Shown piece after piece: positions 1,855-55,640 of a stretch of DNA of 64,000 nucleotides (positions are counted from its first letter, which is position 1; the number at the start of each line of letters is the position of its first letter). The position numbers were made by a program, and so were the translations under genes. The notes under the pieces are model-generated. The model was not told where the DNA came from. It worked only from the letters and a program-made list of their open reading frames with translations, and did not search any database. The DNA lies in the IMG/VR virus record IMGVR_UViG_3300047320_000285, positions 124,001-188,000 of that record, one strand, 5' to 3'.

Positions 1855-1891
1855 GGCATAAAGCCCGGGGATTTCGCCCCGAGCCTTACGC
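1855..1891 (-). terminator. TATGCC-type hairpin terminator
   Basis: Minus strand reads stem TCGGGG/CCCCGG then GCTTTATGCCG, just downstream of the 1902-3293 gene. Confidence 0.55.
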
Positions 1892-1901
1892 GAGCCACGC
1901 T

Positions 1902-3293
1902 TCAGCGGGCTTGGAAGATCATCCGCAGCGACATGTAGTCGCAGTACTTCGCGCCCTTGATCGAACGAGCCATTTCCTTGGTCGCCGGGGACTTGAAACA
2001 CTCCTCGATGTTTTCCAAGAACTGCTGGACCTGACGAATCATGGCCGCCACTTCACGACCCGATTGCAGCTGATCCGAAGCGGTCTGTTCGAACTTGGTG
2101 AAAGTCGATTCGATCTTCTCGCCTTCTTGCTCGAACGCCTTGGCTTGCTTCAGATACGCGTCGACATGCTCCAGATACTGGAAGCCGGCATCGATAACCG
2201 TACCCACGTCTTCAGTGGTGAACTTGATGGTCATCTGTGCGCCCGACTTGATATTGCTGGCGTACGGAATCGCGTTCTTGGCAATCTTGAGGGCCGTGTG
2301 CTTCCAGCTGCCTGATTCGACCACTTTCTTGGGCGAGGCCAGTTCCGAGAGCTTGGCAAACGACTTGCCGCCAATCGACACGGGCTTGCGCTTGGTGCCG
2401 ACATCGACTTCCAGACCCGTGACCGAGAGGAACGGCTTACCGCCAATCAACGACCGATCGAACAACGCCGCCGGATGTTGCAAGCCTTCGATGGCTTGGG
2501 CAAGCCGAATCGCGTTGGCTTCGTCAGACAGCTTGGCTTGACCCAAGATGCCTTCGGCTTTGCCGTACAGCTCCGAGACCTTCTTCGGGTATTCGATCAA
2601 CACGTACGAGGACATCTTGACATCTTTCTCGATTTCCGGAATCAGGTCCTTCGCATCCCCATTATCGGTGGCAAAGTGATACCACATCTCGACGAGGTTG
2701 CCGGTGTGCTGGCGTTCGTGCCAGTCGTCTTTCTTGTGGTTGTACTCCGCCTTGCCCTTTTCCAGTCGCGTGCGGTACTTGCCGACGCGCGATTCGACGC
2801 TGCGAATCAAGTCGTTCCAGAAGTCACGGCTGTGCTTGCGCGAGACCACCCACTGCGTGGCCATGCGATGGAACCAGTTACGCAGAAACTCCAACGCCAT
2901 CTGGCCGCGTTGAGCCGGGGTGGTGTCGGCTTCCAGTGCCGGCAGCTCCATGGTTTCATCCACCCGGGCCAGTTCGTTGTTGATGCCGGTCTCAACCAGC
3001 TGCAACGCTTGGGGCGTACACTCGTCGGCTTCAAGCATCGACTCCAGTACAATCGCGTAGTCGTCAAGGTGTTCGAGCACGGCCGCAGTGGTTTCGATGT
3101 CGCGGCTTTGTGCAGCCAGTTCTTCGTCGGCATGCAGCAGATCTTCAACGAGGTTGTCGCCCCCGTCGATGAGAGCGGCTTCACCGACGTTGTCAGCGTG
3201 GTCCGTACTGGGTTCATCGCCCATACGGCTCCAAGTGCCACCACCGGGCGGTGGAAACTCTTCGACTGCAGGACGGCGGAGGGAGGAGCGCAT
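1902..3293 (-). CDS. Putative internal head protein (phiKZ-like, protease-processed)
   Basis: 463 aa. Acidic N-terminal region with AVE, PALE and MALE motifs followed by FLRNWFHRM, the propeptide + amphipathic helix layout of phiKZ inner-head paralogs. Confidence 0.7.
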   Translation of the reverse strand: MRSSLRRPAVEEFPPPGGGTWSRMGDEPSTDHADNVGEAALIDGGDNLVEDLLHADEELAAQSRDIETTAAVLEHLDDYAIVLESMLEADECTPQALQLVETGINNELARVDETMELPALEADTTPAQRGQMALEFLRNWFHRMATQWVVSRKHSRDFWNDLIRSVESRVGKYRTRLEKGKAEYNHKKDDWHERQHTGNLVEMWYHFATDNGDAKDLIPEIEKDVKMSSYVLIEYPKKVSELYGKAEGILGQAKLSDEANAIRLAQAIEGLQHPAALFDRSLIGGKPFLSVTGLEVDVGTKRKPVSIGGKSFAKLSELASPKKVVESGSWKHTALKIAKNAIPYASNIKSGAQMTIKFTTEDVGTVIDAGFQYLEHVDAYLKQAKAFEQEGEKIESTFTKFEQTASDQLQSGREVAAMIRQVQQFLENIEECFKSPATKEMARSIKGAKYCDYMSLRMIFQAR

Positions 3294-3332
3294 AAGAGAT
3301 CCTTAAATAGTTGAGTTAATACTCCAGAAGAT

Positions 3333-5408: not shown

Positions 5409-5445
5409 GGCATAGAGCCACCCATAATGGGTGGCCGCTTATGCC
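5409..5445 (-). terminator. GGCATA...TATGCC hairpin downstream of dnaB
   Basis: GGCATA-GA-GCCACCC-ATAAT-GGGTGGC-CGCT-TATGCC. Confidence 0.6.
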
Positions 5446-5447
5446 CC

Positions 5448-7028
5448 TTAGGCAAAGAGTGCTTGCGCGTCTTGCGGTTGCTCGTTTTCCCAGAACGGGG
5501 TTTCCTTACCCGAACCAATCGCGCCACCGCCCGGGCGACGCAGGGTCGTGTCCGGTCCGTTGATGTCGTCCAGAATCCCCAGTTGCGGATGGAATTCATG
5601 CACACAGTACTGGTCGAGGATCGGAGTTTGACCAGTGATCCGGTGCTTGCCACGTTGGTAGGTCTGGAAAGCCCGGCCACCGACTTTCTCGATGTGCAGA
5701 TACAGCTCGCCATCCACCTCTTGGTCGATCTGTCCTGAACCCGCGAAATAGCCCTTACCCGGCAGATCCTTGACGAAGTCGGTCTTGCCCTCACGGATCA
5801 ACTGCTTGCCCCCTGTGGAGATCTGATGTGGGGTCCAGAAGGCAATCTTGCGCGGGTTAAAGAAGTTGCGCACTCGCCGGAACATGTCACGTACGTCATG
5901 ACCGGCCGGGCCTTGTGAGCAACCGGTAGTCGGCAACATGTACAGGTAGTCGGCGAAACACGAATGCACTTCAAAGCCATCGGCTTCCCATTCGAGAATC
6001 TTGTTGCACAGCGACCGGTAGTCCCACTTGGTCGGATCCACCCGCAGCATGGTCGACTCATAGCCCGACACGCGCATCTTCTCGTACACGTACTTGCTGA
6101 TTTCTTCGGCCGACAAAGACTTCAGCTCTTCCTCTGTGACCACCGTGCGATTCTCGTTGGCCTTGAGTTTCATGTAGATGTAGCGCATGTTTTGCTCGAT
6201 GGTGTTCTCAAAACTGAAGAACACATTGAGCGGGGTCTTCTGCCGGTCAATCATCAACGGGGTATTGTACTGATTGATCTGACGGAAGACGTCCAGCGTG
6301 AAACCGGACTTGTTCATGTGCGGCAGTGCCGGCACAATCCATTCTTCGCCCCGTCGCAAGCCACCACGCAACATGCGGTTGATGCCCTGCCAGCCGGTTT
6401 GCAGAATCGACGAGCCATCCGCGTCTTCTTTCACCGAGTTGTAGACCTTGGCGATGGATTCGATATTGCTGAAAGTCACCTGTGAGACAATCGCCGGATC
6501 CTGACTGACCGCGTCTTGCTGGTAGGGTTCCAGCTCGCCGACCAGCTCCGCGACGAACTTGCGCATGTCGGGAATGGTCTCGGGCTTGAATACCAGCGCC
6601 ACGTTGGCTTTGTGCACCAGCGTCTTGACGTTCTCATTACGCAGGTGGTTCATCAGCGTGCGGCGGATATTCAGACAGGCCTTCTTGATCGAGCCTTCCT
6701 TCAGTTCGGCGGAGATGCCGCGCTCGAAGGTTTCGAACAGGGGGAGGTCATCCAGACAGTAGAGCTTGAGCGTCTGGAGGATCTCGAATTCCTCATACGT
6801 GTGATCAGTCGGATCATCCGCCATCGACAGGGCGAGGCGTTTGAGGCCGTCGAGCGTTTGCGAGGTCGGGTCCAGTGTGAGCTGCGTATTGGGAAGTTTC
6901 ACTAGCTGCAAGGCGTTGCGGACCAGCGCGGAAGAACGCTCGGTAATCGAGGGCAGTTGCGATTCACGATACAGCAGTGTAATCGCATTGACCAGCAACA
7001 TCTTGCTATCCAGAGGTTTGTTATCCAT
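5448..7028 (-). CDS. dnaB: DnaB-like replicative helicase (phiKZ gp118-like)
   Basis: GWQGINRMLRGGLRRGE, Walker A ALPHMNKS, FFSFEN, ADYL, TPHQIS, IDQEVD, RGKHR. Sits divergent to the gp119-capsid unit as in phiKZ. Confidence 0.9.
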   Translation of the reverse strand: MDNKPLDSKMLLVNAITLLYRESQLPSITERSSALVRNALQLVKLPNTQLTLDPTSQTLDGLKRLALSMADDPTDHTYEEFEILQTLKLYCLDDLPLFETFERGISAELKEGSIKKACLNIRRTLMNHLRNENVKTLVHKANVALVFKPETIPDMRKFVAELVGELEPYQQDAVSQDPAIVSQVTFSNIESIAKVYNSVKEDADGSSILQTGWQGINRMLRGGLRRGEEWIVPALPHMNKSGFTLDVFRQINQYNTPLMIDRQKTPLNVFFSFENTIEQNMRYIYMKLKANENRTVVTEEELKSLSAEEISKYVYEKMRVSGYESTMLRVDPTKWDYRSLCNKILEWEADGFEVHSCFADYLYMLPTTGCSQGPAGHDVRDMFRRVRNFFNPRKIAFWTPHQISTGGKQLIREGKTDFVKDLPGKGYFAGSGQIDQEVDGELYLHIEKVGGRAFQTYQRGKHRITGQTPILDQYCVHEFHPQLGILDDINGPDTTLRRPGGGAIGSGKETPFWENEQPQDAQALFA

Positions 7029-7850: not shown

Positions 7851-10097
7851 ATGTCCAGTCCGTTTCAACTCCGTGACAAATCCAAGGCCGGCACGATCGG
7901 CCACATGGTCCAACAACTCCACTCGGCGCTGAACCGCTCGGGCGCGTCCTTCGCCAGCAACGCTGCTGTGAAGCGTGTGATCTCGATGGAAGGCCTGAGC
8001 GACACGCAACAGACCGAGTTCACGACTTCGCTCGAGTCGTTGCAACTGTCGATCGGCGAAGTCTCGAAGACTTTCGACGAAGGCAAGGGCAAGTACAAGG
8101 TTGCCACCGAAAGCGGTGAAGAACTGCGTTTCTCGTCGCACACGACGGAAGCTCAGAAGTTCGCCGGTATGGTGGCTGGTATGCTCGCCGCTGACGTGCC
8201 GGGTTTCCTCGGTCGCTCGGTGACGCAGCAACCCGCGATGGAGCAGGGCCAGATGTTCGTCCCGGCATCGGGTGCCGACATGCTCGAGAAGCGCACGCAC
8301 GCGCTCGAAGCATACGACGAGAAGGAAAACAAGGAAACGACCGTGTATTCGGTCGCGTACAACATGCAGGCCGCCACGCAGGACGAGTTCGGCGAAGCGC
8401 TGTTCCCGACCTGTATCGTGACGCCGGACCAGTACGGTCTGACGATCTCGATGCGCCTGATCATGGTGATGGACGACCTGCGCCGCAACGCGTCGGGCGA
8501 AGCCATCCGTGACTTCCAGCGCAAGAACATCATCCGCGCAGCGATCGATCCGGCAGTCCTCCGCAACGATCTGACGAAGATCTTCCCGGTCGTGACCGAC
8601 GACGGCGTGGCACTGGGCAACTTCGTCGACGCTGCACTCGTGCCGCCGCAAACGATCGTCCACGAAGGTCAGTCGATCGAAACGGCACCGCTCGCCATTG
8701 GCGCGCAGTTCGACCTGCTGGGCATCTCGCAAACGGAAGCGCTGCTGCAAACGGGCACGCTCGACACGACCGACGCGATCGACCCGAACATCGTGCTCGG
8801 CGCGCTGTACATGTCGATTCAAGGCACGGTGGCCACGGTTGCCACGACGGAAGTCATCAAGTTCGGTAACGTCGGCCTGATGCAAGGTTCGACGATGACG
8901 GCGGCGCCGCAAGGCAACTACCGTCAGCAAATGCTGAACTTCGTGACGGACTCGCTGGCCGTCAACAAGAACACGGTGCTGAACGACGGCGCGGCTTCGG
9001 CCCTGCTGACCTCGCTGGTTACGGCTGGCGCGCAAGTCAAGCTGGCTGTCACGGTGGGCGGTAACGTCAACCTGCAGACGGCTGAAACGTCGATCTGGTC
9101 GGGCAAGGTTCAAGTCGCGGAAGTGCGTGACGCGAACAACAACGTGCTCGACATGACGACCGGCACGGGTCTGGCGTACAAGAACCTGTTCAACGGCGCG
9201 GTGATCTTCGGTTACGACCTCGACGCACGTCGTGTGAACACGAACCGTCGCGAGCGCGGCCAGCTGCTGGACATCACGTATCAAAACGTGATTTACGGCG
9301 TGCCGCTTCTGTCGCCGATCACGGCACCGCGTCCGCCGGCAGGTCCGCAGCAAGACGAAGCGAACTACTTGGCAGGTCTGATCACGGCAACGCGTATCCG
9401 TACGTCGAACGCCGCAGTCGCCAAGCTGCTCGAAGCTGAAGAAGCGCTGAAGGCATTCGTCACGACGAACCTCGGCGACGACCAGTTCGTCAAGCCGGAA
9501 ATCCTCGGCGTGGGTGGCTGGCTGGTGCAGCCGCAGTACCTGCAAGAAGACTACGCTGCACCGTCGGTCGTCGACAGCATCAAGTCGTACGAACGCGCTG
9601 CTGACATTCAGGCTTCGCTGGTCAACATGATCCGCGAAATGGCCTACCGCATGTACCGCGACTCCGGCTACAAGGCCGCAGCCAACGCGATGCACGGCGG
9701 TATCGCGCCGATGCCGACGGTCATCATCGCAACCGACACGTACATCGCGTCGTACCTGCAGGTGACGGGTGACTTCCGTACGCTCGGTAACGAGTTCAAC
9801 GTGAAGGTCGTGTCGACGACGAACAAGCTGATGAAGGGCAAGATCCGCATCACGTTCGGTGAGTTCGGCGAAGGCAAGGAAAACACCCCGAACCCGCTGC
9901 ACTTCGGCGTGATGGCGTGGAAGCCGGAACTGACGCTGATTCTGCCGACGGTGCGTAACGGTTCGAACAGCCGTGAAATCTCGGTTTCGCCGGCATTCCG
10001 CCACATCGTGAACCTGCCGATCATGGCATCGATCGACGTGTCGGGTATCGACGAAGTCGTGAACGCGAAGGTCGCCGTCAACTTCCACACGATCTGA
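7851..10097 (+). CDS. Major capsid protein precursor (phiKZ gp120-like)
   Basis: ATG 7851 with SD AAGGAAG, 748 aa, very strong codon bias. Propeptide with ISME/SLE/ATE/AME ends at THALE (residue 153), followed by AYDEKENKETTVYSVAYN. C-terminal NPLHFG and PAFRHIVNLPI. Confidence 0.95.
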   Translation: MSSPFQLRDKSKAGTIGHMVQQLHSALNRSGASFASNAAVKRVISMEGLSDTQQTEFTTSLESLQLSIGEVSKTFDEGKGKYKVATESGEELRFSSHTTEAQKFAGMVAGMLAADVPGFLGRSVTQQPAMEQGQMFVPASGADMLEKRTHALEAYDEKENKETTVYSVAYNMQAATQDEFGEALFPTCIVTPDQYGLTISMRLIMVMDDLRRNASGEAIRDFQRKNIIRAAIDPAVLRNDLTKIFPVVTDDGVALGNFVDAALVPPQTIVHEGQSIETAPLAIGAQFDLLGISQTEALLQTGTLDTTDAIDPNIVLGALYMSIQGTVATVATTEVIKFGNVGLMQGSTMTAAPQGNYRQQMLNFVTDSLAVNKNTVLNDGAASALLTSLVTAGAQVKLAVTVGGNVNLQTAETSIWSGKVQVAEVRDANNNVLDMTTGTGLAYKNLFNGAVIFGYDLDARRVNTNRRERGQLLDITYQNVIYGVPLLSPITAPRPPAGPQQDEANYLAGLITATRIRTSNAAVAKLLEAEEALKAFVTTNLGDDQFVKPEILGVGGWLVQPQYLQEDYAAPSVVDSIKSYERAADIQASLVNMIREMAYRMYRDSGYKAAANAMHGGIAPMPTVIIATDTYIASYLQVTGDFRTLGNEFNVKVVSTTNKLMKGKIRITFGEFGEGKENTPNPLHFGVMAWKPELTLILPTVRNGSNSREISVSPAFRHIVNLPIMASIDVSGIDEVVNAKVAVNFHTI

Positions 10098-10211: not shown

Positions 10212-10245
10212 GTGACTCTCAGCGGTAAGGCTTGTGGTTGGGGCT

Positions 10246-10294
10246 GTCCCACTCCCTCGGGTCTTCGGACTCGGGGGGTGTGGGACTTTATGCC
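10246..10294 (+). terminator. Capsid operon terminator: long stem with cUUCGg loop then TTTATGCC
   Basis: GTCCCACTCCCTCGGGTC-TTCG-GACTCGGGGGGTGTGGGAC-TTTATGCC. Confidence 0.7.
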
Positions 10295-10317: not shown

Positions 10318-10407
10318 TATGATCTGGAGGCAGTGCGCGAGTGCTGTCTTGCAGGGATCCGAAGGTAGACGGGAGCCTCACGGTTTCCGTCTACTGGGTG
10401 TTATGCC
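10318..10407 (+). ncRNA. Candidate small late RNA: TATG, GNRA hairpin, second hairpin, TTATGCC
   Basis: TATG 10318-21; stem 10327-36/10341-50 with GCGA loop; stem GTAGACGGGAGCC/GGTTTCCGTCTAC 10365-94; TTATGCC 10401-07; no credible ORF. Confidence 0.35.
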
Positions 10408-10430
10408 GTTGCTGCATTTATTTTTGGCAA

Positions 10431-10438
10431 TATATTAC
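10431..10438 (+). promoter_or_regulatory. phiKZ-type early (virion RNAP) promoter TATATTAC
   Basis: Exact match to the established phiKZ early consensus, preceded by an AT tract (TTTATTTTT). Lies 73 nt upstream of the operon leading to an nvRNAP subunit, which must be expressed early. Confidence 0.6.
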
Positions 10439-11856: not shown

Positions 11857-13509
11857 ATGGACGCAGAACTGGCACGGCTCATAGCCCAGGAAACACCGGA
11901 CCTCAACCCGGATTTGGCCAACGGGTTAGCAGTCAAGCATATCCCGGATGTGGAGCCGTATATTGACTCCATCTTCCGGGCGCTGCAAAAGGGATTTCCG
12001 GATGGGTTTTCTTACGTCACCTCCACCCGTTGCGGGCCACAGGGTGACTTTGATGAGCTGACCAAGAAGAAGAACGGCAGTAAGCGGTACTACGATGTGG
12101 CGACCAGCCAACTGTTCATGACGATGCTGGTGTTCAAGTATCGGGGTGAAGAGATCCGGCGGCCACTGCAACTGCCTTATGTGGAAGACGCAGGGGTCAT
12201 CTACTTGGGCGGTTCGCGGTTTGTGATCTCGCCGGTGCTCTCTGACCGGGTAATGTCAGTGGACCTGAACAGTATCTTTATCCGCTTTAACCGGGGTAAG
12301 GTGACCTTCGAGCGCTCACCGCAGTATTTCCGCGCGAACGACGTGCAGGAAACGGTGGACGTGGTACACGGCAAGATCTATAACCGTCCCACCAAACAGA
12401 CCGGCACAGCCAAGCCCACCGTCAAAGGTAACACGACGCTGGTGCATTATCTGTTCTGCAAGTTTGGGGTGCATGAAACGTTTGAACGGTTCGCTGGCAC
12501 GGTGCCGGTATTTGGCGATGCGGAGACGGTCAATCATCACACGCATCCGCAGGATCAGTGGGTGATCTGCGAAAGCAGCGGTATCAAGCCGCGCGGCGTT
12601 GGCGACAAGATCTGGGTGCCCAGCCCGATTCGACTCGCTGTGCGTCGTGATCAGTACACGGCCACGATGAAGAATTATATCGCTGGTCTGTACTATATCC
12701 TCGATCACTTCCCCCGTCGCGTGGAGCTGAATCAGTTCACCGACGAGAAGTTCCGCAATCACACGGGCCGCTGGCGCGTGCTGATGGGCTATCTGATCTT
12801 TGGTGGTAACATCATGGAAGGTCACCTGCATGATAACGTGACGGATCACATCGGCAGTCTCGATGAGTACGTTGACGAAATCATGCGCGTGAAGTTCCGC
12901 GAGATCAAAGTCCCGGTAGAAGACATCTACCAGTTCTTCGGCATCCTGATCGAGCGCTTTAACCAGTGGTTGCTCGATGGGGCGGACAAGATCAACAGCC
13001 TCTATGACAAGGAACTCGGTGTTCTGTATTACGTCATGGAAGATGTCACGATCATGATCAACACGTTCTATTTCAAGTTGATCGCCAGTGCCAAGAGCAA
13101 GCGGGAAATGGGTAAGGACTTGAAAAAGGACGACATCGTCGACCTGATGAACAAGTTCCTGCGCCCCGGGAAGATCTACTCGGTCACCAAGATGCACCAA
13201 GAGGTGTCGACCACTTCGTGCTCGGGTGACAACAAGGCATTCAAAATCACCTCGATGATGGTGCCTCAAGCCAAGACCTCGCGACGCGCGGGTCGTTCTG
13301 ACAGCGGCGCGATGACCGATCCGGCTAAGATTCTCCACACCTCCGTGGCCGAGATTGGCGGGTATGCCAACATGCCCAAGAGTGATCCGTCGGGTCACTC
13401 ACGGATCAATCTGTACGCGCAGATCGATCGTTTTGGGGTGGTGCTCCAGAATCCGGAGCTGGTGTCGATCCTCAAGCCGACCGAGGAAATGATCCGTCGC
13501 AAGCAGTAA
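11857..13509 (+). CDS. Non-virion RNA polymerase beta subunit, N-terminal part (phiKZ gp123-like)
   Basis: 550 aa. LQLPYVEDAGVIYLGGSRFVISPVLSD matches the RpoB N-terminal LPx(n)GxFIINGxERV region. Synteny after the capsid gene. Confidence 0.85.
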   Translation: MDAELARLIAQETPDLNPDLANGLAVKHIPDVEPYIDSIFRALQKGFPDGFSYVTSTRCGPQGDFDELTKKKNGSKRYYDVATSQLFMTMLVFKYRGEEIRRPLQLPYVEDAGVIYLGGSRFVISPVLSDRVMSVDLNSIFIRFNRGKVTFERSPQYFRANDVQETVDVVHGKIYNRPTKQTGTAKPTVKGNTTLVHYLFCKFGVHETFERFAGTVPVFGDAETVNHHTHPQDQWVICESSGIKPRGVGDKIWVPSPIRLAVRRDQYTATMKNYIAGLYYILDHFPRRVELNQFTDEKFRNHTGRWRVLMGYLIFGGNIMEGHLHDNVTDHIGSLDEYVDEIMRVKFREIKVPVEDIYQFFGILIERFNQWLLDGADKINSLYDKELGVLYYVMEDVTIMINTFYFKLIASAKSKREMGKDLKKDDIVDLMNKFLRPGKIYSVTKMHQEVSTTSCSGDNKAFKITSMMVPQAKTSRRAGRSDSGAMTDPAKILHTSVAEIGGYANMPKSDPSGHSRINLYAQIDRFGVVLQNPELVSILKPTEEMIRRKQ

Positions 13510-15670: not shown

Positions 15671-15676
15671 AGCTAT

Positions 15677-15709
15677 GAGGGCCCGGGGGAAACCTCGGGC
15701 CCTTGTGCC
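15677..15709 (+). terminator. Hairpin terminator (TGTGCC variant)
   Basis: GAGGGCCCGGGG-GAAA-CCTCGGGCCCTT then GTGCCCTTT. Confidence 0.55.
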
Positions 15710-18414: not shown

Positions 18415-18444
18415 GGCGGGGGCTTCGGCTCCCGCCTCTGTGCC
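18415..18444 (+). terminator. Hairpin terminator with cUUCGg loop
   Basis: GGCGGGGGC-TTCG-GCTCCCGCC-TC-TGTGCC followed by a T-rich run. Confidence 0.6.
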
Positions 18445-19795: not shown

Positions 19796-20360
19796 AGTTT
19801 CGGGCGGTAGTCAAGTCGCCAACACACTCGTCTACGGGTTGATTCAGACGACCTTGCGAGGCGCTGGGTTCGATGATCTGAAACTGCAGCACCCCTACGG
19901 GTCTGCGGAGTCTGCGGATTCAGACGACATGGTGAGCCTGTTGGAAGTCTTGCAAGTCTCGAACCCGCAGTTGTTCGAAGTCCCGGTAACCTTGGTCCAG
20001 AAGGTCACCGACCGGACCTACGACTGGGGACAGCCGACGCATTTGGTCGAAAGCTTCGTGTACGGTGCTGACGAATACGAAGGTAAAGACTGTTCGAATG
20101 CCGAAATCTATCGCACCGAACAAGCCAAGGCTTTCCTCGCGAAGGTGCATGCCAACCAGACCCCAGCGGATCGTGCAGCGGCTGATGCCGAAGAACTCGC
20201 GATGGAAAGCAAGTTCTTGAAGCACATGAGCAATCCGGCGGTTCGCGAGGTACTGGAAGATCTGTTCGACGAAAAGATCAGCGAGACAGAATTGGCCGAG
20301 TTGCGCGCGAGCGTGGAAGCTAAGCAGAAAGCGGCTAAACAAGAAGCGTCTACGGCATAA
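19758..20360 (+). CDS. Paralog-array protein 6
   Basis: SD AAGGAG; PLKVEVSGG...LRGAGFDDL...SLLEVLQVSNPQLFEVPVTL. Confidence 0.8.
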   Translation: MEKKEALQPLKVEVSGGSQVANTLVYGLIQTTLRGAGFDDLKLQHPYGSAESADSDDMVSLLEVLQVSNPQLFEVPVTLVQKVTDRTYDWGQPTHLVESFVYGADEYEGKDCSNAEIYRTEQAKAFLAKVHANQTPADRAAADAEELAMESKFLKHMSNPAVREVLEDLFDEKISETELAELRASVEAKQKAAKQEASTA

Positions 20361-20402
20361 GCCTCCGAGCCCTCTACCTTTTGGGGTAGAGGGACGTATG
20401 CC
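20354..20402 (+). terminator. GGCATA...TATGCC hairpin
   Basis: CCCTCTACC stem with GGTAGAGGG, flanked by GGCATA and TATGCC, then a T tract. Confidence 0.65.
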
Positions 20403-20453
20403 GTCCTTTCTTTTTTGGCTTAATCTGATGTCCCCCTCATTCCAAGGATCGTC

Positions 20454-20804: not shown

Positions 20805-20839
20805 AGCATAAGCCCAGCCCGAAGGCTGGGCGCTATGCC
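20805..20839. terminator. Bidirectional GCATA...TATGCC hairpin
   Basis: GCATA-A-GCCCAGCC-CGAA-GGCTGGGC-GC-TATGCC between convergent genes. Confidence 0.7.
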
Positions 20840-20850
20840 GTTACGCCAGA

Positions 20851-29907: not shown

Positions 29908-29954
29908 GTCATAACGCCCTCAGCCGCCCTGACGGGTAGCTGAGGGCTTATGCC
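29908..29954. terminator. Bidirectional CATA...TATGCC hairpin
   Basis: GCCCTCAGC/GCTGAGGGC stem flanked by CATA and TATGCC between convergent genes. Confidence 0.7.
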
Positions 29955-29978
29955 GGTTACCAGCGGCGTGGCGGGGCC

Positions 29979-30496: not shown

Positions 30497-30549
30497 GGCA
30501 TAAAAGGTACAACCGATTCCCCACGTGCGGCTGGTGTGAGAAATCGGTT
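30497..30549 (-). terminator. Hairpin + TTTTATGCC after the tail-fibre operon
   Basis: AACCGATT/AATCGGTT outer stem; minus strand ends in TTTTATGCC. Confidence 0.5.
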
Positions 30550-30553
30550 GGTC

Positions 30554-31063
30554 TTAAGGATTGGCAGTCAGCATGATGTTGACCACGACATCAGTGGCAC
30601 CACCCCACGGGTTATCGTCGAAGTGCGCGATACACGCGAAGTTAGGCACCGGTGCGCCCGTCTGGATCGACACGTTCGAGCGTCCCGACACCTTGGCGAT
30701 GCCGGTGCTCCAGCTGGAGTACGCATTGAGGTTGCTCACCGGCGGATAGACCTGCGTGTACGAGCGCAGGCCCGGTCCATGGTCACCGTTAAAGTCATGC
30801 GGATTGAACGCCCCGGTCTGGAAGTTCACGTCTACCGAGCCATTGCGGTCCACGTACACATGAATCTGGGCGAAGACCACATTGTTAATCGGCACCAGAT
30901 GCGTCTTGCCGTACCAGAAACTCCACGCGAAACGGCCACCCGAGCCGACCCCGGCCAGCCCCGACAGCGCGCTGGAACCGGCGTTGTAACGCTGGGGAAT
31001 ACCGATCCCGCACTCAAGCATCGCCTGACCCATGCTGATGGGTCCGGAACTTTGCATGGTCAT
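30554..31063 (-). CDS. Tail-fibre tip adhesin-like protein
   Basis: N-terminus MTMQSSGPISMGQAMLECG...WSFWYGKT resembles fibre-tip adhesin anchor domains; directly follows the S74 fibre gene. Confidence 0.55.
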   Translation of the reverse strand: MTMQSSGPISMGQAMLECGIGIPQRYNAGSSALSGLAGVGSGGRFAWSFWYGKTHLVPINNVVFAQIHVYVDRNGSVDVNFQTGAFNPHDFNGDHGPGLRSYTQVYPPVSNLNAYSSWSTGIAKVSGRSNVSIQTGAPVPNFACIAHFDDNPWGGATDVVVNIMLTANP

Positions 31064-32681: not shown

Positions 32682-34505
32682 TTAGCTGGCAGCCAGCGTG
32701 GTGGTGAGGTTGTTGAACATCGTGGTCATCGCCGTCAACACCGCATTGACGTCCGACATCCGGGCGTAGGCATCGGTAGTCGCGTAGGTGATGCTGGCTG
32801 GTGCCACCGCGACCCGGTTGTTGGTGATGATCGTCTCGGAACTGCCTGACAGCGTCGTCACACACAGACCGTCGAGGTTCGGGCCAGTATGCAGCCATAC
32901 ACGTGCGACGAGGTTGCCATTCACCGTTTCAACCGTGTAACCGAACTGGTTCGCAGGGATCGGCGTGTTGCCTTGCGGATCCAGACGCGAGACATCCATC
33001 GTCACTTGGTTCGGCGTCGTACCCCGCACGTTGACGCTCACGTAATACGTAGCGGACTGCAGGGCACCATTCGAATCGCCCCCCGACACCAGCCAGCGGA
33101 CATCGGCAAAGGTCGAGGCCGTGTCACCGCTCAACGGTAACGGCACTTGGGCCAGCTCCGTCCAGTAATCGGTCAGCGCTTCACCCGAGGTCGGCTGATA
33201 CAACGTGGCCTTGGCAAAGCTCCCGCCACCGGAGGCCGCCTGTGCGACGATCTGGTCCACCGTCAACCCTTCCAGCAGACTGGCGTTCGCTGCCGGACCG
33301 TTCTGGGTTAGCACCCACGTGGCAAACGCCGCCGGGCTCATCCCGTTCACGTTGGCGGTGTTGTTGGCCGTGCCGTTGTTGAGTACCCATGCGGCAAAGG
33401 TCGGTGCATCCATGCCGTTGAATTCGAACGTATCGGCGGCTTTCCCGGCGAGTGTATCCGAAATCACTTGGGCATAGGTACGACCACCCAGCTCGTTAGA
33501 GTTCGCTGCCGTGCCTTGCAACACCTGAGCCGCATACGCCGCCGGGCTCAGGCCATCGAACAGCGTCGAGTTCGCCGCGGTCTGGGCCAGTACGAATTGC
33601 GCGTACGCATTCTGGTCCATGCCGTTGAATTTCAGCGTGTCGCCTGCGGTATCATTCGGCCCCAACTTGCCTGCGAGCAGGTTGTTCATGGTCGGAATGT
33701 CGTAGGCATTCACTTGGGCAGCGGTGACCACGTGCGGGTTGGTGTGGTCGTTGATGTGCGTCTGCAGCGCCGCGCCCGGACCGGCTGCACCATTGATCGC
33801 TTGCGCCACCAAGAACGGCGTCACGTACAACTGATTGCTCGTGCCGTTTTGCATGTCGGTGAGCGTCGCAATGCCGTAGTTCTGTACATTGCCCAAGCCC
33901 ACTTGGGTGGACGTGGTGTGGTGCGGATTACCGAAGTCGGCCAAATGCTGCGCCAGCCCGCCACCGTTTTGCGCGAGGATCGCCTGCTGGATCGCAGTCA
34001 GGGCATTGACCACATCGGTTGCGCCCACCAGATCGACGAGATCCCATTCGTGATCGATCGGCGGGAATGCAATCGGTTGCTCGATCACTTCTTCCCACGC
34101 GGTCACCCGCGGATCATGCAGGTTGTAGGCGAGCAGTTCAGCAATCTGTTGTTCGTTGATGGCCCACACACCCCCCAACGTCTGGTACTGCATGATGAGC
34201 ACACCGGAGAGCTGCGTATTGAGCAGACTCACGCCACCCCAGATCGGTGCTGCGCAGGCACGCGAGGCCGAGATAAATTCGAAACAGCCATACCAGTCGA
34301 TACCCAAGACCAACGGCCGGGTGGTCCCGTCGCTGTTCTGGAGGGTGATCCTCATGCTGTCGAGGAAATACGGGGCAAGCTGCGGTACCACGAAATGGTA
34401 GTCTCGGTAGTTCACTGCCGAGATCACGACCTGTTCATTCGTGATAAGGTTGGAAGCAAGCTGACCCGTGGGATCGAACGGATAGCTCAGGGTAGGTGTT
34501 GACAT
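32682..34505 (-). CDS. Tail fibre/virion protein, paralog of the 31067-32626 N-terminus
   Basis: Shared YP.DPTG....NL..NE and YQTLGG; two NPH repeats and six ~23-aa repeats. Confidence 0.8.
   Translation of the reverse strand: MSTPTLSYPFDPTGQLASNLITNEQVVISAVNYRDYHFVVPQLAPYFLDSMRITLQNSDGTTRPLVLGIDWYGCFEFISASRACAAPIWGGVSLLNTQLSGVLIMQYQTLGGVWAINEQQIAELLAYNLHDPRVTAWEEVIEQPIAFPPIDHEWDLVDLVGATDVVNALTAIQQAILAQNGGGLAQHLADFGNPHHTTSTQVGLGNVQNYGIATLTDMQNGTSNQLYVTPFLVAQAINGAAGPGAALQTHINDHTNPHVVTAAQVNAYDIPTMNNLLAGKLGPNDTAGDTLKFNGMDQNAYAQFVLAQTAANSTLFDGLSPAAYAAQVLQGTAANSNELGGRTYAQVISDTLAGKAADTFEFNGMDAPTFAAWVLNNGTANNTANVNGMSPAAFATWVLTQNGPAANASLLEGLTVDQIVAQAASGGGSFAKATLYQPTSGEALTDYWTELAQVPLPLSGDTASTFADVRWLVSGGDSNGALQSATYYVSVNVRGTTPNQVTMDVSRLDPQGNTPIPANQFGYTVETVNGNLVARVWLHTGPNLDGLCVTTLSGSSETIITNNRVAVAPASITYATTDAYARMSDVNAVLTAMTTMFNNLTTTLAAS
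33235..33647 (-). repeat. Six tandem ~23-aa fibre repeats
   Basis: AGDTLKFNGMDQ, AANSTLFDGLSP, AANSNELGGRTY, AADTFEFNGMDA, ANNTANVNGMSP, AANASLLEGLTV. Confidence 0.75.
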
Positions 34506-35859: not shown

Positions 35860-35896
35860 GGCATAGGACCCCGGGGGCGACCCCGGGGCTTATGTC
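35860..35896. terminator. Bidirectional GGCATA...TATGTC hairpin
   Basis: CCCCGGGG-GCGA-CCCCGGGG between convergent genes. Confidence 0.7.
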
Positions 35897-40778: not shown

Positions 40779-40822
40779 GGCATAAAAAACGGGAGAGGCC
40801 GCGCGCCTCTCCCCAATATGCC
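40779..40822. terminator. Bidirectional GGCATA...TATGCC hairpin
   Basis: GGGAGAGGC/GCCTCTCCC stem between convergent genes. Confidence 0.7.
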
Positions 40823-40827
40823 GCAGT

Positions 40828-45938: not shown

Positions 45939-45949
45939 TTTCACAGAGC

Positions 45950-45987
45950 GGCATAGACGCCCGGGGCGACCCCCCGGGCTTTATGCC
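45950..45987. terminator. Bidirectional GGCATA...TATGCC hairpin
   Basis: GCCCGGGG/CCCCGGGC stem between convergent genes. Confidence 0.7.
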
Positions 45988-45995
45988 GCCATCCC

Positions 45996-51069: not shown

Positions 51070-51903
51070 ATGAATAAACAAGAACAGGCGCTGATGATCG
51101 AGCTTGATTGTTTGCTCGATACTCGCTTAGCGACCATTGCTCGCATTAGCGAGCAGGCAGCGGTAGATGTCTTGAAGAATGACTACCACAAGCGTAAAGC
51201 CGATTGGTTTGAGCCTGTGGTCGATATGGACCAGTACACGAGCTTGTATCGAGCACGTGACGTCGACACGCTAAAACTGGCGCACCCTACTGAAGGGTTC
51301 CGGTTCGTGCGCGAGATGGTCAAGTTGTATCGGGAGCAGGCTGTTGACACCAACAGTCCGTATAGCGGCAAGATCAAAATTGCTGTCAATACGTATCCCT
51401 ATCAGCTCAATGCTGAACTGACCGACCTCATCGGCAGAGCTTTGGCAGTAAGGTTCGGGGCGATCGCGTCCTGTGAACTGGTCAGCCTCTCACCTGCAGA
51501 ATTGACGCCGGAATTAGTTCGCGCGAGATTTTGCATGCTCATGATGTACGAGTACGATCCTTGGTTGAGCATGCACTACGATATTGATCCGTCGAAGCTC
51601 TCGGCGGGTGAAATGAAACAAGTCTTGAAGAGTCTGTTGCTCGATGTGACGCTGTTTGCACCTGCAGTGTATTACAAAAAGCCACCGACACAAGACGAAG
51701 TGGAAGAGGTGATGAAGGATACACATCACCCATTAGAAGTTATCGAAATGATGGGCACGACCGTGATCGGTCTCCATCTGCTCGATGTTACTTCTTTCAG
51801 TGTCATTCGACCTGCGCGGCCACAAATGCCCACCTCCACCACAGCTGCTCCTAGTGAGCCGGCTGTGGTGGAGGAAGGCTTACAGGATCCGATGCAGGAC
51901 TAA
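51070..51903 (+). CDS. Conserved hypothetical protein (phiKZ gp147-like position)
   Basis: 277 aa; IELDCLLDTRLAT N-terminal motif. Confidence 0.7.
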   Translation: MNKQEQALMIELDCLLDTRLATIARISEQAAVDVLKNDYHKRKADWFEPVVDMDQYTSLYRARDVDTLKLAHPTEGFRFVREMVKLYREQAVDTNSPYSGKIKIAVNTYPYQLNAELTDLIGRALAVRFGAIASCELVSLSPAELTPELVRARFCMLMMYEYDPWLSMHYDIDPSKLSAGEMKQVLKSLLLDVTLFAPAVYYKKPPTQDEVEEVMKDTHHPLEVIEMMGTTVIGLHLLDVTSFSVIRPARPQMPTSTTAAPSEPAVVEEGLQDPMQD

Positions 51904-52379
51904 CTGGGTTCAGTCTCGTCAGCTACGGCTGGCTTGAACTGGGCTTGGAAAGCTTCGAATGTCAGCTGAAGCGGCGACTGCGACAATTCCCCTTCCACTA
52001 ACACCGGCTCGGGTACATCACTGCCCAGCTCCGGAGCGACGCGAGTCACTCCGGGGTTTGTGGCCCCTTGCTGAAAGAATGTCGCATCTTTGGAGCGCTT
52101 GAGCATTTCGGCCACCAGCCCCGTCATGGCGGAGCCCGTCTTGTTGGCCTGCTCATCCACCTTGATCCGTTTGCGACCCAGCGCGTTGCGATCCATGCCG
52201 TCGAGCGCGCCGAGAATCAGGTTGACGTCTTTGGTGTCGCCGGGCAGAGCCGTGCCGTTTTGTGTGAGCTTGTCGATCACAAAGCGACGTTGTTGTTGGG
52301 TATAATTGAGGACTTGGTCCTCATCCATCGCAGGCGGCAAGACCTGCACTTCAGTTTGCGGTGCGGTGATTTCAGACAT
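51900..52379 (-). CDS. Hypothetical protein
   Basis: SD GAGG; 159 aa; 4-bp convergent overlap with the previous gene. Confidence 0.7.
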   Translation of the reverse strand: MSEITAPQTEVQVLPPAMDEDQVLNYTQQQRRFVIDKLTQNGTALPGDTKDVNLILGALDGMDRNALGRKRIKVDEQANKTGSAMTGLVAEMLKRSKDATFFQQGATNPGVTRVAPELGSDVPEPVLVEGELSQSPLQLTFEAFQAQFKPAVADETEPS

Positions 52380-52488: not shown

Positions 52489-53013
52489 ATGCGCCTAATG
52501 CGTAGAATCGTTCAGCCGTTGCGATACCAGTATCTGGAATATCGGCAAGCGGCTACGGGCGGGGTCCAGACACCGGATCGCGCGTACATGACAGAGTTGG
52601 TGAAACTGCTCCATCCTGTGGACTTTGAAACCTACCGTACCGAGCACGGCTTGGCGGCCACCGTGACCGTCCAGCATGCCAACATCGGCGAGATGTCGGA
52701 CTTTCTGAAACGCGCCGCCGATCTGTTAGCCGCGGGTCAGATGGTGCCGATTGAAGAGCTGCAGGCGCGCCAGACGACGGTGTCGCTCGACGAGTGGCTC
52801 ACGGTAGCCAATGGCTTTTATGTCAGCCCGGTCGGTGGCTTGACATTGTTTCTGGACCACGCGCGGCGATTACTGAAAGTCGTCGCTGCGCACGAACACG
52901 AGAAGGTTGGTGTCTATACCGCGAGCTGGCGGCAGATGCGCAACTTTTACGTGAGCTTGCAGGCGTTGTTGGTGTGTCTGGTGCAAGCCAGCCACGAGTG
53001 CCTGAAGGCGTAA
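52489..53013 (+). CDS. Hypothetical protein
   Basis: Probable ATG 52489, downstream of motif CTCCCTTATACTGCC. Confidence 0.65.
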   Translation: MRLMRRIVQPLRYQYLEYRQAATGGVQTPDRAYMTELVKLLHPVDFETYRTEHGLAATVTVQHANIGEMSDFLKRAADLLAAGQMVPIEELQARQTTVSLDEWLTVANGFYVSPVGGLTLFLDHARRLLKVVAAHEHEKVGVYTASWRQMRNFYVSLQALLVCLVQASHECLKA

Positions 53014-53058
53014 TTGCCGTAACACTTCCTTATACTACCATGACACTGAGGTAACAAT

Positions 53059-53523: not shown

Positions 53524-53593
53524 ACACCAAGCCTGCGCATTGACGCAAACCCGTACGCCGTTCTTTGCGGACGTGCTGAACCGGAGCAACGTG

Positions 53594-54130: not shown

Positions 54131-54145
54131 CTTCGCGCTCGTAGA

Positions 54146-54175
54146 GCGCCCCTTCGGGGGCTGCTCTTTTTTTTT
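54146..54175 (+). terminator. Classical intrinsic terminator
   Basis: GAGCGCCCC-TTCG-GGGGCTGCTC followed by a long T run. Confidence 0.8.
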
Positions 54176-54197
54176 GTTCATTTCAAGGATCGAAGCG

Positions 54198-55592
54198 ATG
54201 GCTGGAACAACTATTGGTACCGCGGTGCAAAGCGCCACTGCGGCGGCGAGTAAAGTGGCCAGTCAAACGGCTGCTGCCGTCAATCAAGCAGCATCCCAAC
54301 TCCCCACGACCCTCGGCGGCTTGACGGCTAACCTGAGTGGCAATACGTGGACTTCCTCCGCGAAAGATGCACTGGCGGTTAAAGACGTCTATACCGGGGT
54401 AGATGGCAAGAGTGTCCTCACCAGTGTCCAGAACCTGTTCAGTGACATCGGCCTGAATCTGTCGGATGTGCTGCGCGGGGGGAAGTGGGTCGCCGCACAG
54501 ATCCCGCTGATTACCTCGCTGGTCAAACAAGGCGAAGCAGTCCTGTCACAAAAAGGCCTTGTGGCCCGGGTGATGAGTGCGTCAGGCTTGGCGACGGGTG
54601 CCTTGTCACGACTGACCGCAGGCGCCACTGATGGCATCTTGGGCGAGATCAAGGACTTCGGGCAGGTGTACGCGTCGTTTAATGGCGTGCTGCAACGGGT
54701 GGCGTCGACCGATCTGACCAACATGAATGCCGTGGGTGGGCTGATCAATTCATGGACGGGTCAGAATGGCTTGTTTGCCTCCGACGACCAAGACGGGAAG
54801 GTCGGCTTTATCACGGGGCTGATCCATGACTGTACCAGCTACGGGATTCCCAATTCGTTTGGTTCGCTGGTGTCTCAGCTGGAGAATACCAATCTGGTGT
54901 CGCAGGTGACCAATCGGGTGCTGCCGTCCGTGATTGGGGCGAGTGACATCAGCTCGCTGAAGTCGATGGCCTTCACCCTCGGCGACAAAGCGATCACCGC
55001 CCTGAACCCGAATGCGGTGTCGCATTTCTCTTCGGCGTTCAGTATGCCACCGCTCTCGACGGCCACGGATAACTCCGCCAAGTTCGATGAACTGATCGAT
55101 GCGTACTCAACGGTGGATTCGACATGGAACACCAATGTCCGCAATACGGCCAACGGTTCGGTGTCGACCCTGAACCTGACCAGTGTGATGAATGGTTCGG
55201 ATGACTTCAATGTAGTGCTCAACCAAGGTTCGATGAGTGCGCCGCCCCCCACTGATCCCGCGCAGGTCAATCCGCAGCTGTATCAGCTGGCCACCAAACT
55301 GTCGACTCCGGACCCGGTGAGTACGCTGATGCAGCAGTTTCCGGCGACCCTGTATCAGCCGAATACGATCGCCGCTCAGCCGAGCACCGATGCCGATACG
55401 ATCGGCGCCAACCCATCCTTGGCCGCCGCGAGTGCCAACCCGACCTCGCAACAGCATATCTTGCTGGGTCACAGCCAAGGGGGCACACCAGTGTATTCGG
55501 ACGACCAGTACCGGGCCGGTATGATGATCGATATCACGCCGCAAGGTAAGGCCTATATCGATTCGAAGATTGCTGCCGGTCAGCCGTGGTAA
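54198..55592 (+). CDS. Putative baseplate/tail structural protein
   Basis: ATG 54198 with SD AAGGA; Ala/Ser/Thr-rich; LAVKDVY motif; convergent with the hub gene. Confidence 0.7.
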   Translation: MAGTTIGTAVQSATAAASKVASQTAAAVNQAASQLPTTLGGLTANLSGNTWTSSAKDALAVKDVYTGVDGKSVLTSVQNLFSDIGLNLSDVLRGGKWVAAQIPLITSLVKQGEAVLSQKGLVARVMSASGLATGALSRLTAGATDGILGEIKDFGQVYASFNGVLQRVASTDLTNMNAVGGLINSWTGQNGLFASDDQDGKVGFITGLIHDCTSYGIPNSFGSLVSQLENTNLVSQVTNRVLPSVIGASDISSLKSMAFTLGDKAITALNPNAVSHFSSAFSMPPLSTATDNSAKFDELIDAYSTVDSTWNTNVRNTANGSVSTLNLTSVMNGSDDFNVVLNQGSMSAPPPTDPAQVNPQLYQLATKLSTPDPVSTLMQQFPATLYQPNTIAAQPSTDADTIGANPSLAAASANPTSQQHILLGHSQGGTPVYSDDQYRAGMMIDITPQGKAYIDSKIAAGQPW

Positions 55593-55602
55593 GTCGCTCA
55601 AG

Positions 55603-55640
55603 GTCATAAGCCCCCTCCCGACCGGGAGGGGGTCTATGCC
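55603..55640. terminator. Bidirectional CATA...TATGCC hairpin
   Basis: CCCCCTCCCG/CGGGAGGGGG stem between convergent genes. Confidence 0.7.

What the first reader, a model, noticed from the sequence alone, without database searches (positions are those of the whole stretch)
1855..55640. Dispersed hairpin family in which TATGCC replaces the U-tract
Seen: about 14 GC-rich hairpins at gene ends (1855, 5409, 10246, 10365, 15677, 18415, 20354, 20805, 29908, 30497, 35860, 40779, 45950, 55603). Stem sequences differ, but the flank is conserved as TATGCC (variants TGTGCC, TATGTC) on the 3' side of the transcribed strand. All six convergent junctions carry both arms (CATA...TATG); several co-directional ones keep only the sense-strand copy (10246, 10365, 30497; degenerate at 1855). 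Most lack a proper U-run, whereas 54146 is a normal terminator. Inference: a termination or RNA-processing signal specific to the phage RNAPs. Since TATG is also the phiKZ late-promoter core, the element may couple termination to re-initiation or antisense transcription. Similar hairpins may exist in other phiKZ-like genomes; I do not know of a characterised mechanism.
Basis: partly seen in the sequence, partly recalled or inferred. Interest (0 to 1): 0.65.

Follow-up and report, generated by a model that had tools for sequence, protein, structure and literature searches.

The report
phiKZ-type terminator hairpins with TATGCC tail
The hairpins are real and are the GC-rich form of a transcription-terminator motif already mapped in the giant phages phiKZ and 201phi2-1: a variable stem-loop followed by a conserved TATGCCGT word instead of a run of U, a word shared by this whole phage family and unexplained mechanistically.

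Summary
Confirmed. The window is part of a 253.7-kb, 57% GC phiKZ-like jumbo phage assembled from a rhizosphere metagenome. All 14 listed hairpins exist. Genome-wide there are about 59 strand-specific copies. TATG follows hairpins 69 times against 16 expected, and the consensus tail is YT-TATG-C-C-G-T. The conserved arm lies on the transcribed strand: both arms at convergent gene ends, one arm at co-directional ends, none at divergent junctions.

This matches the terminator motif (hairpin + YTTATKYYGT) found at 61 mapped RNA 3' ends in phiKZ, and a similar motif in 201phi2-1. There, 3' ends fall 1-2 nt after TATG. The element after the major capsid gene (10364-10408) is the positional counterpart of phiKZ terminator T057. 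TATG is the most enriched word after hairpins in FLC9, RP12, phiKZ, 201phi2-1 and 59 uncultivated relatives (340 against 86 expected), including AT-rich genomes.

So it is a terminator. Phage-polymerase specificity is not shown, because 201phi2-1 copies also work in an uninfected host. Re-initiation at the terminator's own TATG is not supported by the phiKZ start-site rows read.

My untested hypothesis is that the nvRNAP beta-lobe pocket that reads non-template TATG at promoters also reads it here as a pause signal.

The parts
1855..1885 (-). Terminator element read on the - strand: hairpin then TTTATGCC (GGCATA at 1855-1860 on +). It follows gene 1902-3224(-). The other arm is degenerate.
5409..5445 (.). 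Two-armed element: GGCATA at 5409, 8-bp stem, TATGCC at 5440. It follows gene 5448-7028(-), a DnaB-like helicase by synteny.
10246..10294 (+). First of two tandem terminators after the major capsid gene (7851-10097). Long hairpin with UUCG loop, then TT-TATGCC at 10289.
10364..10408 (+). Second capsid-gene terminator: 14-bp stem, TATGCCG at 10402. It is the positional counterpart of phiKZ T057 (mapped 3' end 120629).
10431..10438 (+). TATATTAC, an early-promoter-like word 29 nt after the terminator TATG. The same terminator-promoter arrangement occurs in FLC9, RP12, RSL2 and phiKZ.
15674..15709 (+). Terminator with 15-bp stem, GAAA loop and variant tail TGTGCC (15704). It follows gene 13592-15670.
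18415..18444 (+). Terminator with 9-bp stem, UUCG loop and variant tail TGTGCC (18439).
20354..20403 (.). Two-armed element at a co-directional junction: GGCATA at 20354, TATGCCG at 20397.
20805..20840 (.). Bidirectional terminator at a convergent junction: GCATA at 20806, TATGCCG at 20834.
29908..29955 (.). Bidirectional terminator at a convergent junction: CATA at 29910, TATGCCG at 29949.
30497..30555 (-). Single-arm element read on the - strand (GGCATA at 30497 on +). The stem is 9 bp with a large loop, the least canonical member.
35860..35896 (.). Bidirectional terminator: GGCATA at 35860, variant TATGTC at 35891.
40779..40823 (.). Bidirectional terminator: GGCATA at 40779, TATGCCG at 40817.
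45950..45988 (.). Bidirectional terminator: CGGCATA at 45949, TATGCCG at 45982.
55603..55641 (.). Bidirectional terminator: CATA at 55605, TATGCCG at 55635.
54143..54180 (+). Ordinary intrinsic terminator (hairpin + T9). It belongs to the second, rarer class (at least 13 genome-wide).
11857..13509 (+). Homologue of phiKZ GP123, the beta-like nvRNAP subunit whose pocket binds non-template TATG in phiKZ. Of 14 pocket residues, 8 are identical and 2 are aromatic swaps.

Best explanation
These are the phage's main transcription terminators, of the type already mapped in phiKZ and 201phi2-1.

Each is a GC-rich RNA hairpin of arbitrary sequence, often with a UUCG loop. It is followed 0-4 nt later by the conserved word (Y)T-TATG-C-C-G-T on the transcribed strand.

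By analogy with the mapped relatives, the transcript ends 1-2 nt after TATG. That is 6-10 nt past the stem, the geometry of hairpin-dependent intrinsic termination.

At convergent gene ends one hairpin serves both directions, so the word appears on both strands as CGGCATA...TATGCCG.

Inferred, not shown: the conserved word supplies the pause and weak-hybrid function that a long U-tract supplies in ordinary terminators. It offers a short U-rich stretch (UUAU), then a pyrimidine 3' end facing an incoming G.

A further hypothesis, which I put at about 0.25: the non-template TATG is held by the same beta-lobe pocket of the non-virion RNA polymerase that reads TATG at late promoters.
For: - Motif identity. 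The logo here is T/C, T, TATG, C 54/69, C 53/69, G 41/69, T 34/69. The published phiKZ terminator motif is hairpin + YTTATKYYGT, n=61. Motif A of 201phi2-1 is similar.
- Mapped 3' ends. In phiKZ (101370, 114207, 120629, 133099, 147179) and 201phi2-1 (179552, 183876, 189851) the ends fall at TATG+1 or +2. In most of them the next nucleotide after the end is G.
- Orientation rule. The arm is present on the strand whose gene ends there, on both at convergent junctions and on neither at divergent ones.
- Geometry. TATG+2 lies 6-10 nt (mode 8-9) after the stem.
- Synteny. The capsid-gene terminator plus a downstream early-type promoter word is shared by window, FLC9, RP12, RSL2 and phiKZ.
- Family-wide signal. 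TATG is the top 4-mer after hairpins in 5 of 7 phiKZ-like phages and absent in the control RSL1. In 59 IMG/VR loci it occurs 340 times against 86 expected. 48 of 59 have hairpin + TATG after the capsid gene.
- Not a composition effect. C, C, G after TATG stay 2.6-3x above background in genomes below 43% GC.
- Positions +6 and +7 (G, T) are conserved although they lie beyond the mapped RNA ends. This points to a signal read during transcription rather than in the finished RNA.
- Pocket. GP123 binds non-template TATG in phiKZ. S144, F151, H331 and Q466 are invariant in 45 distinct homologues against 5% of all positions, P=0.005.
Against: - There is no RNA data for this phage. The only full holder is one rhizosphere DNA run, so no 3' end is mapped here.
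- ONT-cappable-seq 3' ends in the relatives could be processed rather than primary ends, and their resolution is about 2 nt.
- 201phi2-1 copies also terminate with host RNAP. The word is therefore not needed for a phage-specific mechanism and may simply be a tolerated, degenerate U-tract.
- The GP123 pocket is described as closed in the transcribing complex.
- At the mapped end, TATG lies 2-3 nt behind the position it holds at promoters.
- Four pocket residues differ in the window homologue.
- SPN3US, AR9 and largely RSL2 lack the TATG enrichment.
Confidence: 0.8

Rival explanations
1. Terminator fused to a late promoter. The TATG after the hairpin is itself an nvRNAP start site (G = +1), so each element ends one transcript and starts the next, or starts an antisense RNA at convergent junctions.
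For: TATG with G = +1 is the phiKZ late-promoter core. The pocket residues are conserved here. In phiKZ some late starts lie just after terminators: P049 starts at a second TATG 3 nt after the terminator's, and P054 starts 20 nt after.
Against: In the phiKZ rows read (P008-P066 against T001-T076), no start site coincides with a terminator's own TATG. Offsets are 20-59 nt. Bidirectional terminators such as T012/13, T018/19 and T051/52 have no starts on them. At all six convergent junctions here a start would only make antisense RNA into the neighbouring gene. [quoted passage not shown]
Confidence: 0.07
2. An RNA-level signal rather than a termination signal. The hairpin plus UAUGCC tail would be a processing, stability or export tag on mRNAs that must leave the phage nucleus, read by a nuclease or an RNA-binding protein.
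For: 3'-end sequencing cannot separate primary from processed ends. Chimalliviruses export mRNA from a nucleus and encode an mRNA-binding protein. [quoted passage not shown]
Against: The conserved G and T at +6 and +7 lie beyond the mapped RNA ends. The distance from stem to end is that of intrinsic termination. Cloned 201phi2-1 elements block downstream expression in an uninfected host without phage factors.
Confidence: 0.08
3. Ordinary intrinsic terminators with a degenerate U-tract. TATGCCGT would have no specific role and be conserved only through shared ancestry or mutational bias.
For: They work with host RNAP. UUUAU keeps the hairpin-proximal U's that matter most for bacterial RNAP (my own knowledge). 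The genome also has normal T-run terminators.
Against: Stems have diverged completely while the tail word is kept in phages sharing only 31-57% capsid-protein identity and spanning 32-59% GC. C, C, G are enriched about 3-fold even in AT-rich genomes, where a U-tract would cost nothing. The non-phiKZ jumbo phage RSL1, of similar GC, lacks it.
Confidence: 0.1
4. A DNA-level palindrome: a binding site for a dimeric protein, a recombination or packaging site, or a mobile REP/MITE-like repeat.
For: Two-armed copies are near-perfect DNA palindromes. The phage encodes an SbcC-like protein (37048-39444).
Against: At co-directional junctions only the arm on the transcribed strand is kept. Stem sequences are unrelated, so the copies are not copies of one element. 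All sit at gene 3' ends and some at syntenic positions across the family. There is no Rfam family match.
Confidence: 0.02

Closest known systems
Conserved phiKZ terminator motif (Putzeys et al. 2024, microLife, PMC10914365) and motif A of 201phi2-1 (PMC11512511)
   Same: A GC-rich hairpin of variable sequence is followed by YTTATKYYGT. It occurs in bidirectional pairs at convergent genes, sits at the same position after the capsid gene, and belongs to the same phage family with two multisubunit RNAPs.
   Different: In this phage K and YY are almost fixed as G and CC, and the flanking T's are fewer, so no U-tract is left. No 3' ends are mapped in this phage. The published work did not link the word to the late-promoter core or to GP123, and did not survey the family.
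Canonical bacterial intrinsic (Rho-independent) terminator, including bidirectional ones with A-tract/U-tract flanks
   Same: There is a GC-rich hairpin, the RNA end lies 7-9 nt after the stem, one hairpin serves both directions at convergent genes, and the 201phi2-1 copies work with host RNAP.
   Different: The 7-9 nt U-tract is replaced by a specific word with a median of 3 U in 8 nt. The word is conserved as a sequence, including G/C positions, across genomes of very different GC content.
Sequence-specific pausing through non-template-strand contacts of RNAP (sigma-dependent promoter-proximal pauses; core recognition element pocket of bacterial beta; consensus pause with pyrimidine 3' end and incoming G). 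From my own knowledge.
   Same: A promoter-type word in the single-stranded non-template strand is re-read by the elongating enzyme. The YY|G after TATG fits the pyrimidine(-1)/G(+1) rule.
   Different: This is only a hypothesis here. No pausing data exist for any phiKZ-type RNAP.
T7 RNAP class II (sequence-specific, hairpin-independent) termination signal. From my own knowledge.
   Same: A phage polymerase responds to a short conserved word at the end of transcripts.
   Different: T7 RNAP is a single-subunit enzyme, and its class II signal needs no hairpin. Here the hairpin is always present.

Membership tests
phiKZ-type conserved terminator (hairpin + YTTATKYYGT) | GC-rich stem-loop of variable sequence directly followed by TTAT-K-Y-Y-G-T | tested here: met
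   The logo of 69 elements is T/C, T, TATG, C, C, G, T. All 14 window sites carry it or a one-base variant.
phiKZ-type conserved terminator (hairpin + YTTATKYYGT) | Located at gene 3' ends on the transcribed strand; two-armed at convergent genes | tested here: met
   sense arm 29/92 against antisense 8/92 at ++ junctions; both arms in 12/17 convergent; none with both arms at divergent junctions.
phiKZ-type conserved terminator (hairpin + YTTATKYYGT) | Host genome is a phiKZ-like phage with nvRNAP/vRNAP | tested here: met
   The capsid protein hits phrog_3231 and is 56% identical to FLC9. The helicase / gp119 / capsid / gp122 / gp123 synteny is kept. A GP123 homologue aligns.
phiKZ-type conserved terminator (hairpin + YTTATKYYGT) | Transcript 3' ends map 1-2 nt after TATG | not testable with these tools
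   No RNA run holds this genome. Shown only for phiKZ and 201phi2-1.
Canonical intrinsic terminator | U-tract of about 7-9 nt, mostly U, after the hairpin | tested here: not met
   Median 3 T in 8 nt; longest T run 2 or less in 42/56. The consensus scan did not pick these sites.
Canonical intrinsic terminator | Stable GC-rich hairpin ending 7-9 nt before the RNA 3' end | tested here: inconclusive
   The hairpin is present. The distance is 6-10 nt only if the end lies at TATG+2 as in relatives.
phiKZ late promoter (nvRNAP) | TATG with G as the start site, used as a transcription start | tested here: inconclusive
   The word is present. In the phiKZ rows read, no start maps on a terminator TATG. 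No 5'-end data exist for this phage.
REP/MITE-like dispersed repeat | Copies share sequence over their whole length | tested here: not met
   Stems are unrelated in sequence; only the 7-8 nt tail is shared.

The most novel reading that the evidence does not exclude
One four-base word marks both ends of transcription units in phiKZ-like phages. The beta-lobe pocket of the non-virion RNA polymerase fixes the start site by binding non-template TATG. It would also capture TATG when the elongating enzyme meets it just after a hairpin. That capture would hold the enzyme long enough for hairpin-driven release, a core-subunit, sequence-read terminator that lets GC-rich phages do without U-tracts.
Probability: 0.25. 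Interest if true: 0.75.

Novelty: new member of a known kind. Interest (0 to 1): 0.45.

Why it matters
The termination chemistry of the phiKZ-type split multisubunit RNA polymerases is unstudied. This GC-rich genome shows which part of the published phiKZ terminator motif is under selection. It is not U-richness but the word TATGCCGT, kept across about 60 related genomes from 32 to 59% GC while the stems change freely.

This gives a compact, searchable rule for annotating transcription units in uncultivated jumbo phages. It also gives a sharp experiment, because the word contains the nvRNAP promoter core that GP123 binds. If the link holds, it would be a new way for a multisubunit polymerase to recognise terminators. 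If it does not, the elements are still strong, compact, often bidirectional terminators that may work in host cells.

Tried and rejected
- Megablast of 12 kb against the phage collection found no match.
- The single-protein scan of IMG/VR found no relative. The alignment-based scan worked.
- The generic promoter/terminator scan found no more terminator-like sites than shuffles and missed these elements.
- Rfam and tRNA scans of the window found nothing.
- The sequencing-run search found only DNA metagenomes and no RNA. Read laying was therefore not used, because contigs cannot show RNA ends.
- TATG avoidance inside genes: sense TATG is 0.59x and CATA 0.57x of synonymous-shuffle expectation (z about -12 and -8). 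Many AT-rich words are equally depleted, so this is not specific evidence.
- Covariation of the tail word with GP123 pocket residues across phages: the core is invariant almost everywhere. Only the most divergent locus (L051) and AR9 lose both pocket and enrichment. That is too few independent cases and is confounded by phylogeny.
- I looked for a split of TATG-type against T-run terminators by early and late regions. In phiKZ both types occur next to early promoters, and I had no temporal data here, so I dropped it.
- A start-codon reading of TATG (ATG) is rejected, because it cannot apply at convergent junctions.
- One script call returned no answer and was repeated.
Full report
**What the window is.** The window is bases 124,001-188,000 of a single 253,740-bp contig with 56.9% GC. 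Its proteins place it among phiKZ-like jumbo phages.
- The 748-aa product of 7851-10097 matches the phiKZ-type major head protein family at E 1e-184.
- It is 55.9% identical to Burkholderia phage FLC9, about 41% to Ralstonia phages RP12/RP31 and about 30% to Pseudomonas, Erwinia and Klebsiella phiKZ-like phages.
- The gene order DnaB-like helicase (-), gp119-like, capsid, gp122-like, nvRNAP beta-like subunit (gp123-like), gp124-like is the same as in phiKZ, FLC9, RP12, RSL2 and SPN3US.
- The only sequencing run holding the stretch in full is a rhizosphere metagenome. No RNA run holds it. It is therefore an uncultivated phage, and no transcript ends can be read for it.

Every listed site has a stable GC-rich hairpin. 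The stated word follows 0-6 nt (10 nt at 10246) after a perfect inner stem on the transcribed strand.
- Two sites have TGTGCC (15704, 18439) and one has TATGTC (35891).
- Site 54146 is a plain hairpin + T9 terminator.
- My own gene calls give six convergent junctions with intergenic space, and all six carry both arms. A seventh, near 51900, has overlapping stops, atypical codon-position GC and no element.
- Sites 5409 and 20354 are two-armed although co-directional.
- Sites 1855, 10246, 10365, 15677, 18415 and 30497 keep only the arm on the transcribed strand.

The signal is positional rather than a matter of abundance. TATGCC as a word is no commoner in the window than composition predicts.
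- The paired pattern occurs 5 times against 0.71 expected.
- In the whole genome, 50 of 104 TATGCC words sit directly after a perfect hairpin.
- TATG follows hairpins 69 times against 16 expected, with 51 of these at offsets 0-3.

**Orientation rule.** The genome has 118 intergenic hairpins with stems of 7 bp or more.
- At co-directional junctions the arm downstream of the ending gene matches TATGCC with at most one mismatch in 29 of 92. The opposite arm matches in 8 of 92.
- At convergent junctions 13 and 14 of 17 match, and both arms match in 12.
- At divergent junctions no hairpin has both arms.
- About 59 strand-specific signals of this class exist, against at least 13 hairpin + T-run terminators.

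A signal that follows the direction of the gene ending there, and doubles where two genes end, acts on or during transcription. It does not act on duplex DNA. This also argues against a pure promoter reading, which would predict the word at divergent, not convergent, junctions.

**The word.** Aligned on TATG, the flank reads T/C, T, TATG, C (54/69), C (53/69), G (41/69), T (34/69). After the stem there are a median of 3 T in 8 nt, and T runs of 2 or less in 42 of 56 elements. There is thus no U-tract. Loops are often UUCG.

**It is a known motif.** Putzeys et al. (microLife 2024, PMC10914365) mapped 133 transcript 3' ends in phiKZ by ONT-cappable-seq.
[quoted passage not shown] They also reported six bidirectional terminator regions between convergent genes.
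- The 201phi2-1 study (PMC11512511) found a motif (n=59) that 'strongly resembles' it.
- The window's consensus YTTATGCCGT is that motif with K=G and YY=CC.
- A 50-kb piece of phiKZ shows the same anatomy, including CATAA on the 5' side.

I placed published end coordinates on the phiKZ and 201phi2-1 sequences. The ends fall at TATG+1 or +2 (phiKZ 101370, 114207, 120629, 133099, 147179; 201phi2-1 179552, 183876, 189851). The next base is G in most of them. Transferred to this phage, the ends would lie 6-10 nt (mode 8-9) after the stem, the usual distance for hairpin-driven termination.

**Positional homology.** Downstream of the capsid gene, window, FLC9, RP12, RSL2 and phiKZ all have hairpin + T-TATG-(C/T)(C/T)GT. 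An early-promoter-like TATATTAC or close variant follows about 26-65 nt later, at 29 nt in the window. In phiKZ this terminator is T057, with its mapped end at 120629. The window element at 10364-10408 is therefore its positional counterpart.

**Family-wide survey.** I ran an unbiased count of all 4-mers in the 12 nt after hairpins.
- TATG ranks first in the window, FLC9, RP12, phiKZ and 201phi2-1. It is weak in RSL2 and absent in SPN3US and AR9, which show TTAT/TATT instead. It is also absent in the unrelated jumbo phage RSL1 of similar GC.
- An alignment-based scan of IMG/VR returned 59 loci of uncultivated relatives with 31-57% capsid identity and 28-59% GC.
- Pooled, TATG is the most enriched word: 340 observed against 86 expected, Poisson P about 1e-94. 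TTAT, TTTA, ATGC and TGCC follow.
- 48 of the 59 loci have hairpin + TATG within 500 nt after the capsid gene, with unrelated stems.
- In the 16 loci below 43% GC, C, C, G after TATG occur at 47%, 49% and 53% against an 18% background.

The tail is thus a conserved sequence, not a by-product of composition. Positions +6 and +7 are conserved even though they lie beyond the mapped RNA ends.

'Termination signal' is supported by the above. 'Specific to phage RNAPs' is not. Two TATG-tailed 201phi2-1 terminators (ends at 179,552 and 183,876) terminated as well as or better than lambda T0 in a reporter in uninfected P. chlororaphis.

'Coupled re-initiation at TATG' is not supported where data exist. 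In the phiKZ rows I read (starts P008-P066, ends T001-T076), same-strand starts lie 20-59 nt beyond the ends, at separate early, middle or late promoters. None lies on a terminator's TATG, and none on the bidirectional pairs. What does recur is a terminator abutting an early-type promoter.

**Mechanism.**
- Shown: the anatomy, the orientation rule, the identity with mapped terminators and the conservation.
- Inferred: hairpin-dependent termination with the end just after TATG.
- Hypothesis: a 2026 cryo-EM study (PMC12809450) found that in phiKZ the late-promoter TATG (-3 to +1) of the non-template strand is bound base-specifically in a pocket of the beta-like core subunit GP123, not by the sigma-like GP68. 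GP123 travels with the elongating enzyme. A TATG emerging in the non-template strand just after a hairpin could therefore be caught by the same pocket and stall the enzyme, doing the job of a U-tract.

The window's GP123 homologue (11857-13509) keeps 8 of the 14 contact residues and has aromatic swaps at two more. Across 45 distinct homologues S144, F151, H331 and Q466 are invariant, against 5% of all positions (P=0.005). Positions 185 and 406 are aromatic in all but the most divergent locus.

Against the hypothesis:
- The pocket is described as closed in the transcribing complex.
- The mapped ends are 2-3 nt past the register used at promoters.
- Host RNAP also stops at such sites.

I put the terminator reading at about 0.8 and the pocket model at about 0.25.

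**Rivals.**
- A fused late promoter: contradicted by the phiKZ start maps and by the convergent sites.
- A finished-RNA tag for processing, stability or nuclear export: possible, but the conserved bases beyond the RNA end and activity in uninfected cells argue against it.
- A degenerate U-tract with no specific role: hard to square with conservation of G/C positions in AT-rich genomes.
- A DNA palindrome or mobile repeat: excluded by strand asymmetry and unrelated stems.

**Novelty.** The kind is already described for phiKZ and 201phi2-1. This is a new, GC-rich member.
- The conserved part is TATGCCGT rather than U-richness.
- It extends across the family, including uncultivated genomes.
- It contains the word that the polymerase's own core subunit reads at promoters.

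Noticed in passing
genome positions 8256, 48004, 116787, 118192, 177031 (= window 53031), 219197; window 53010-53040: A second conserved upstream word, (T)AACACTTCC followed at once by TTTATACT or TATACTAC, sits just before ribosome-binding sites of several genes. It may be another promoter class, perhaps the counterpart of the phiKZ middle promoters (AAanTTAC).
   Followed up: partly
window 10402-10438; genome 63028-63061, 109931-109966, 116710-116746: Terminator TATGCC and the early-promoter-like TATATTAC recur 26-29 nt apart. A terminator-promoter cassette with looser spacing (about 33-65 nt) is also seen in FLC9, RP12, RSL2 and phiKZ.
   Followed up: partly
window 10239-10246, and the same position in many of loci L009-L049: The word TGGGGCT lies immediately 5' of the first hairpin after the capsid gene in the window and in roughly half of the uncultivated relatives, although the stems differ. 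It may be a conserved piece of the capsid mRNA 3' UTR.
   Followed up: no
window 51070-52379: Two convergent ORFs with overlapping stops, lower third-position GC (0.59 and 0.67 against about 0.78) and no terminator between them. They may be recently acquired genes or wrong calls.
   Followed up: partly
whole genome, coding regions: TATG and its complement CATA are about 0.6x of synonymous-shuffle expectation inside genes, but so are many AT-rich words. The SD-like GAGG is the most depleted word.
   Followed up: yes
window 31067-32626 and 32682-34505 (-): Two adjacent paralogous genes share an N-terminal virion-protein domain (phrog_2163). The first also has tail-fibre-like C-terminal matches. 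This looks like a tail-fibre cassette.
   Followed up: no
window 57830-64000 (-), continuing to genome 188606: A single ORF of about 2,258 aa runs off the window end. It was not examined.
   Followed up: no
genome 188607-188683 (just past the window end): A divergent intergenic region has the inverse arrangement, TATG...weak hairpin...CATA. This is as expected for two back-to-back TATG-type promoters rather than a terminator.
   Followed up: no
L006 (SPN3US), L007 (AR9): These more distant relatives show TTAT/TATT but not TATG after hairpins, and their GP123 homologues have diverged pocket residues. This hints that the terminator tail and the promoter core may change together.
   Followed up: partly
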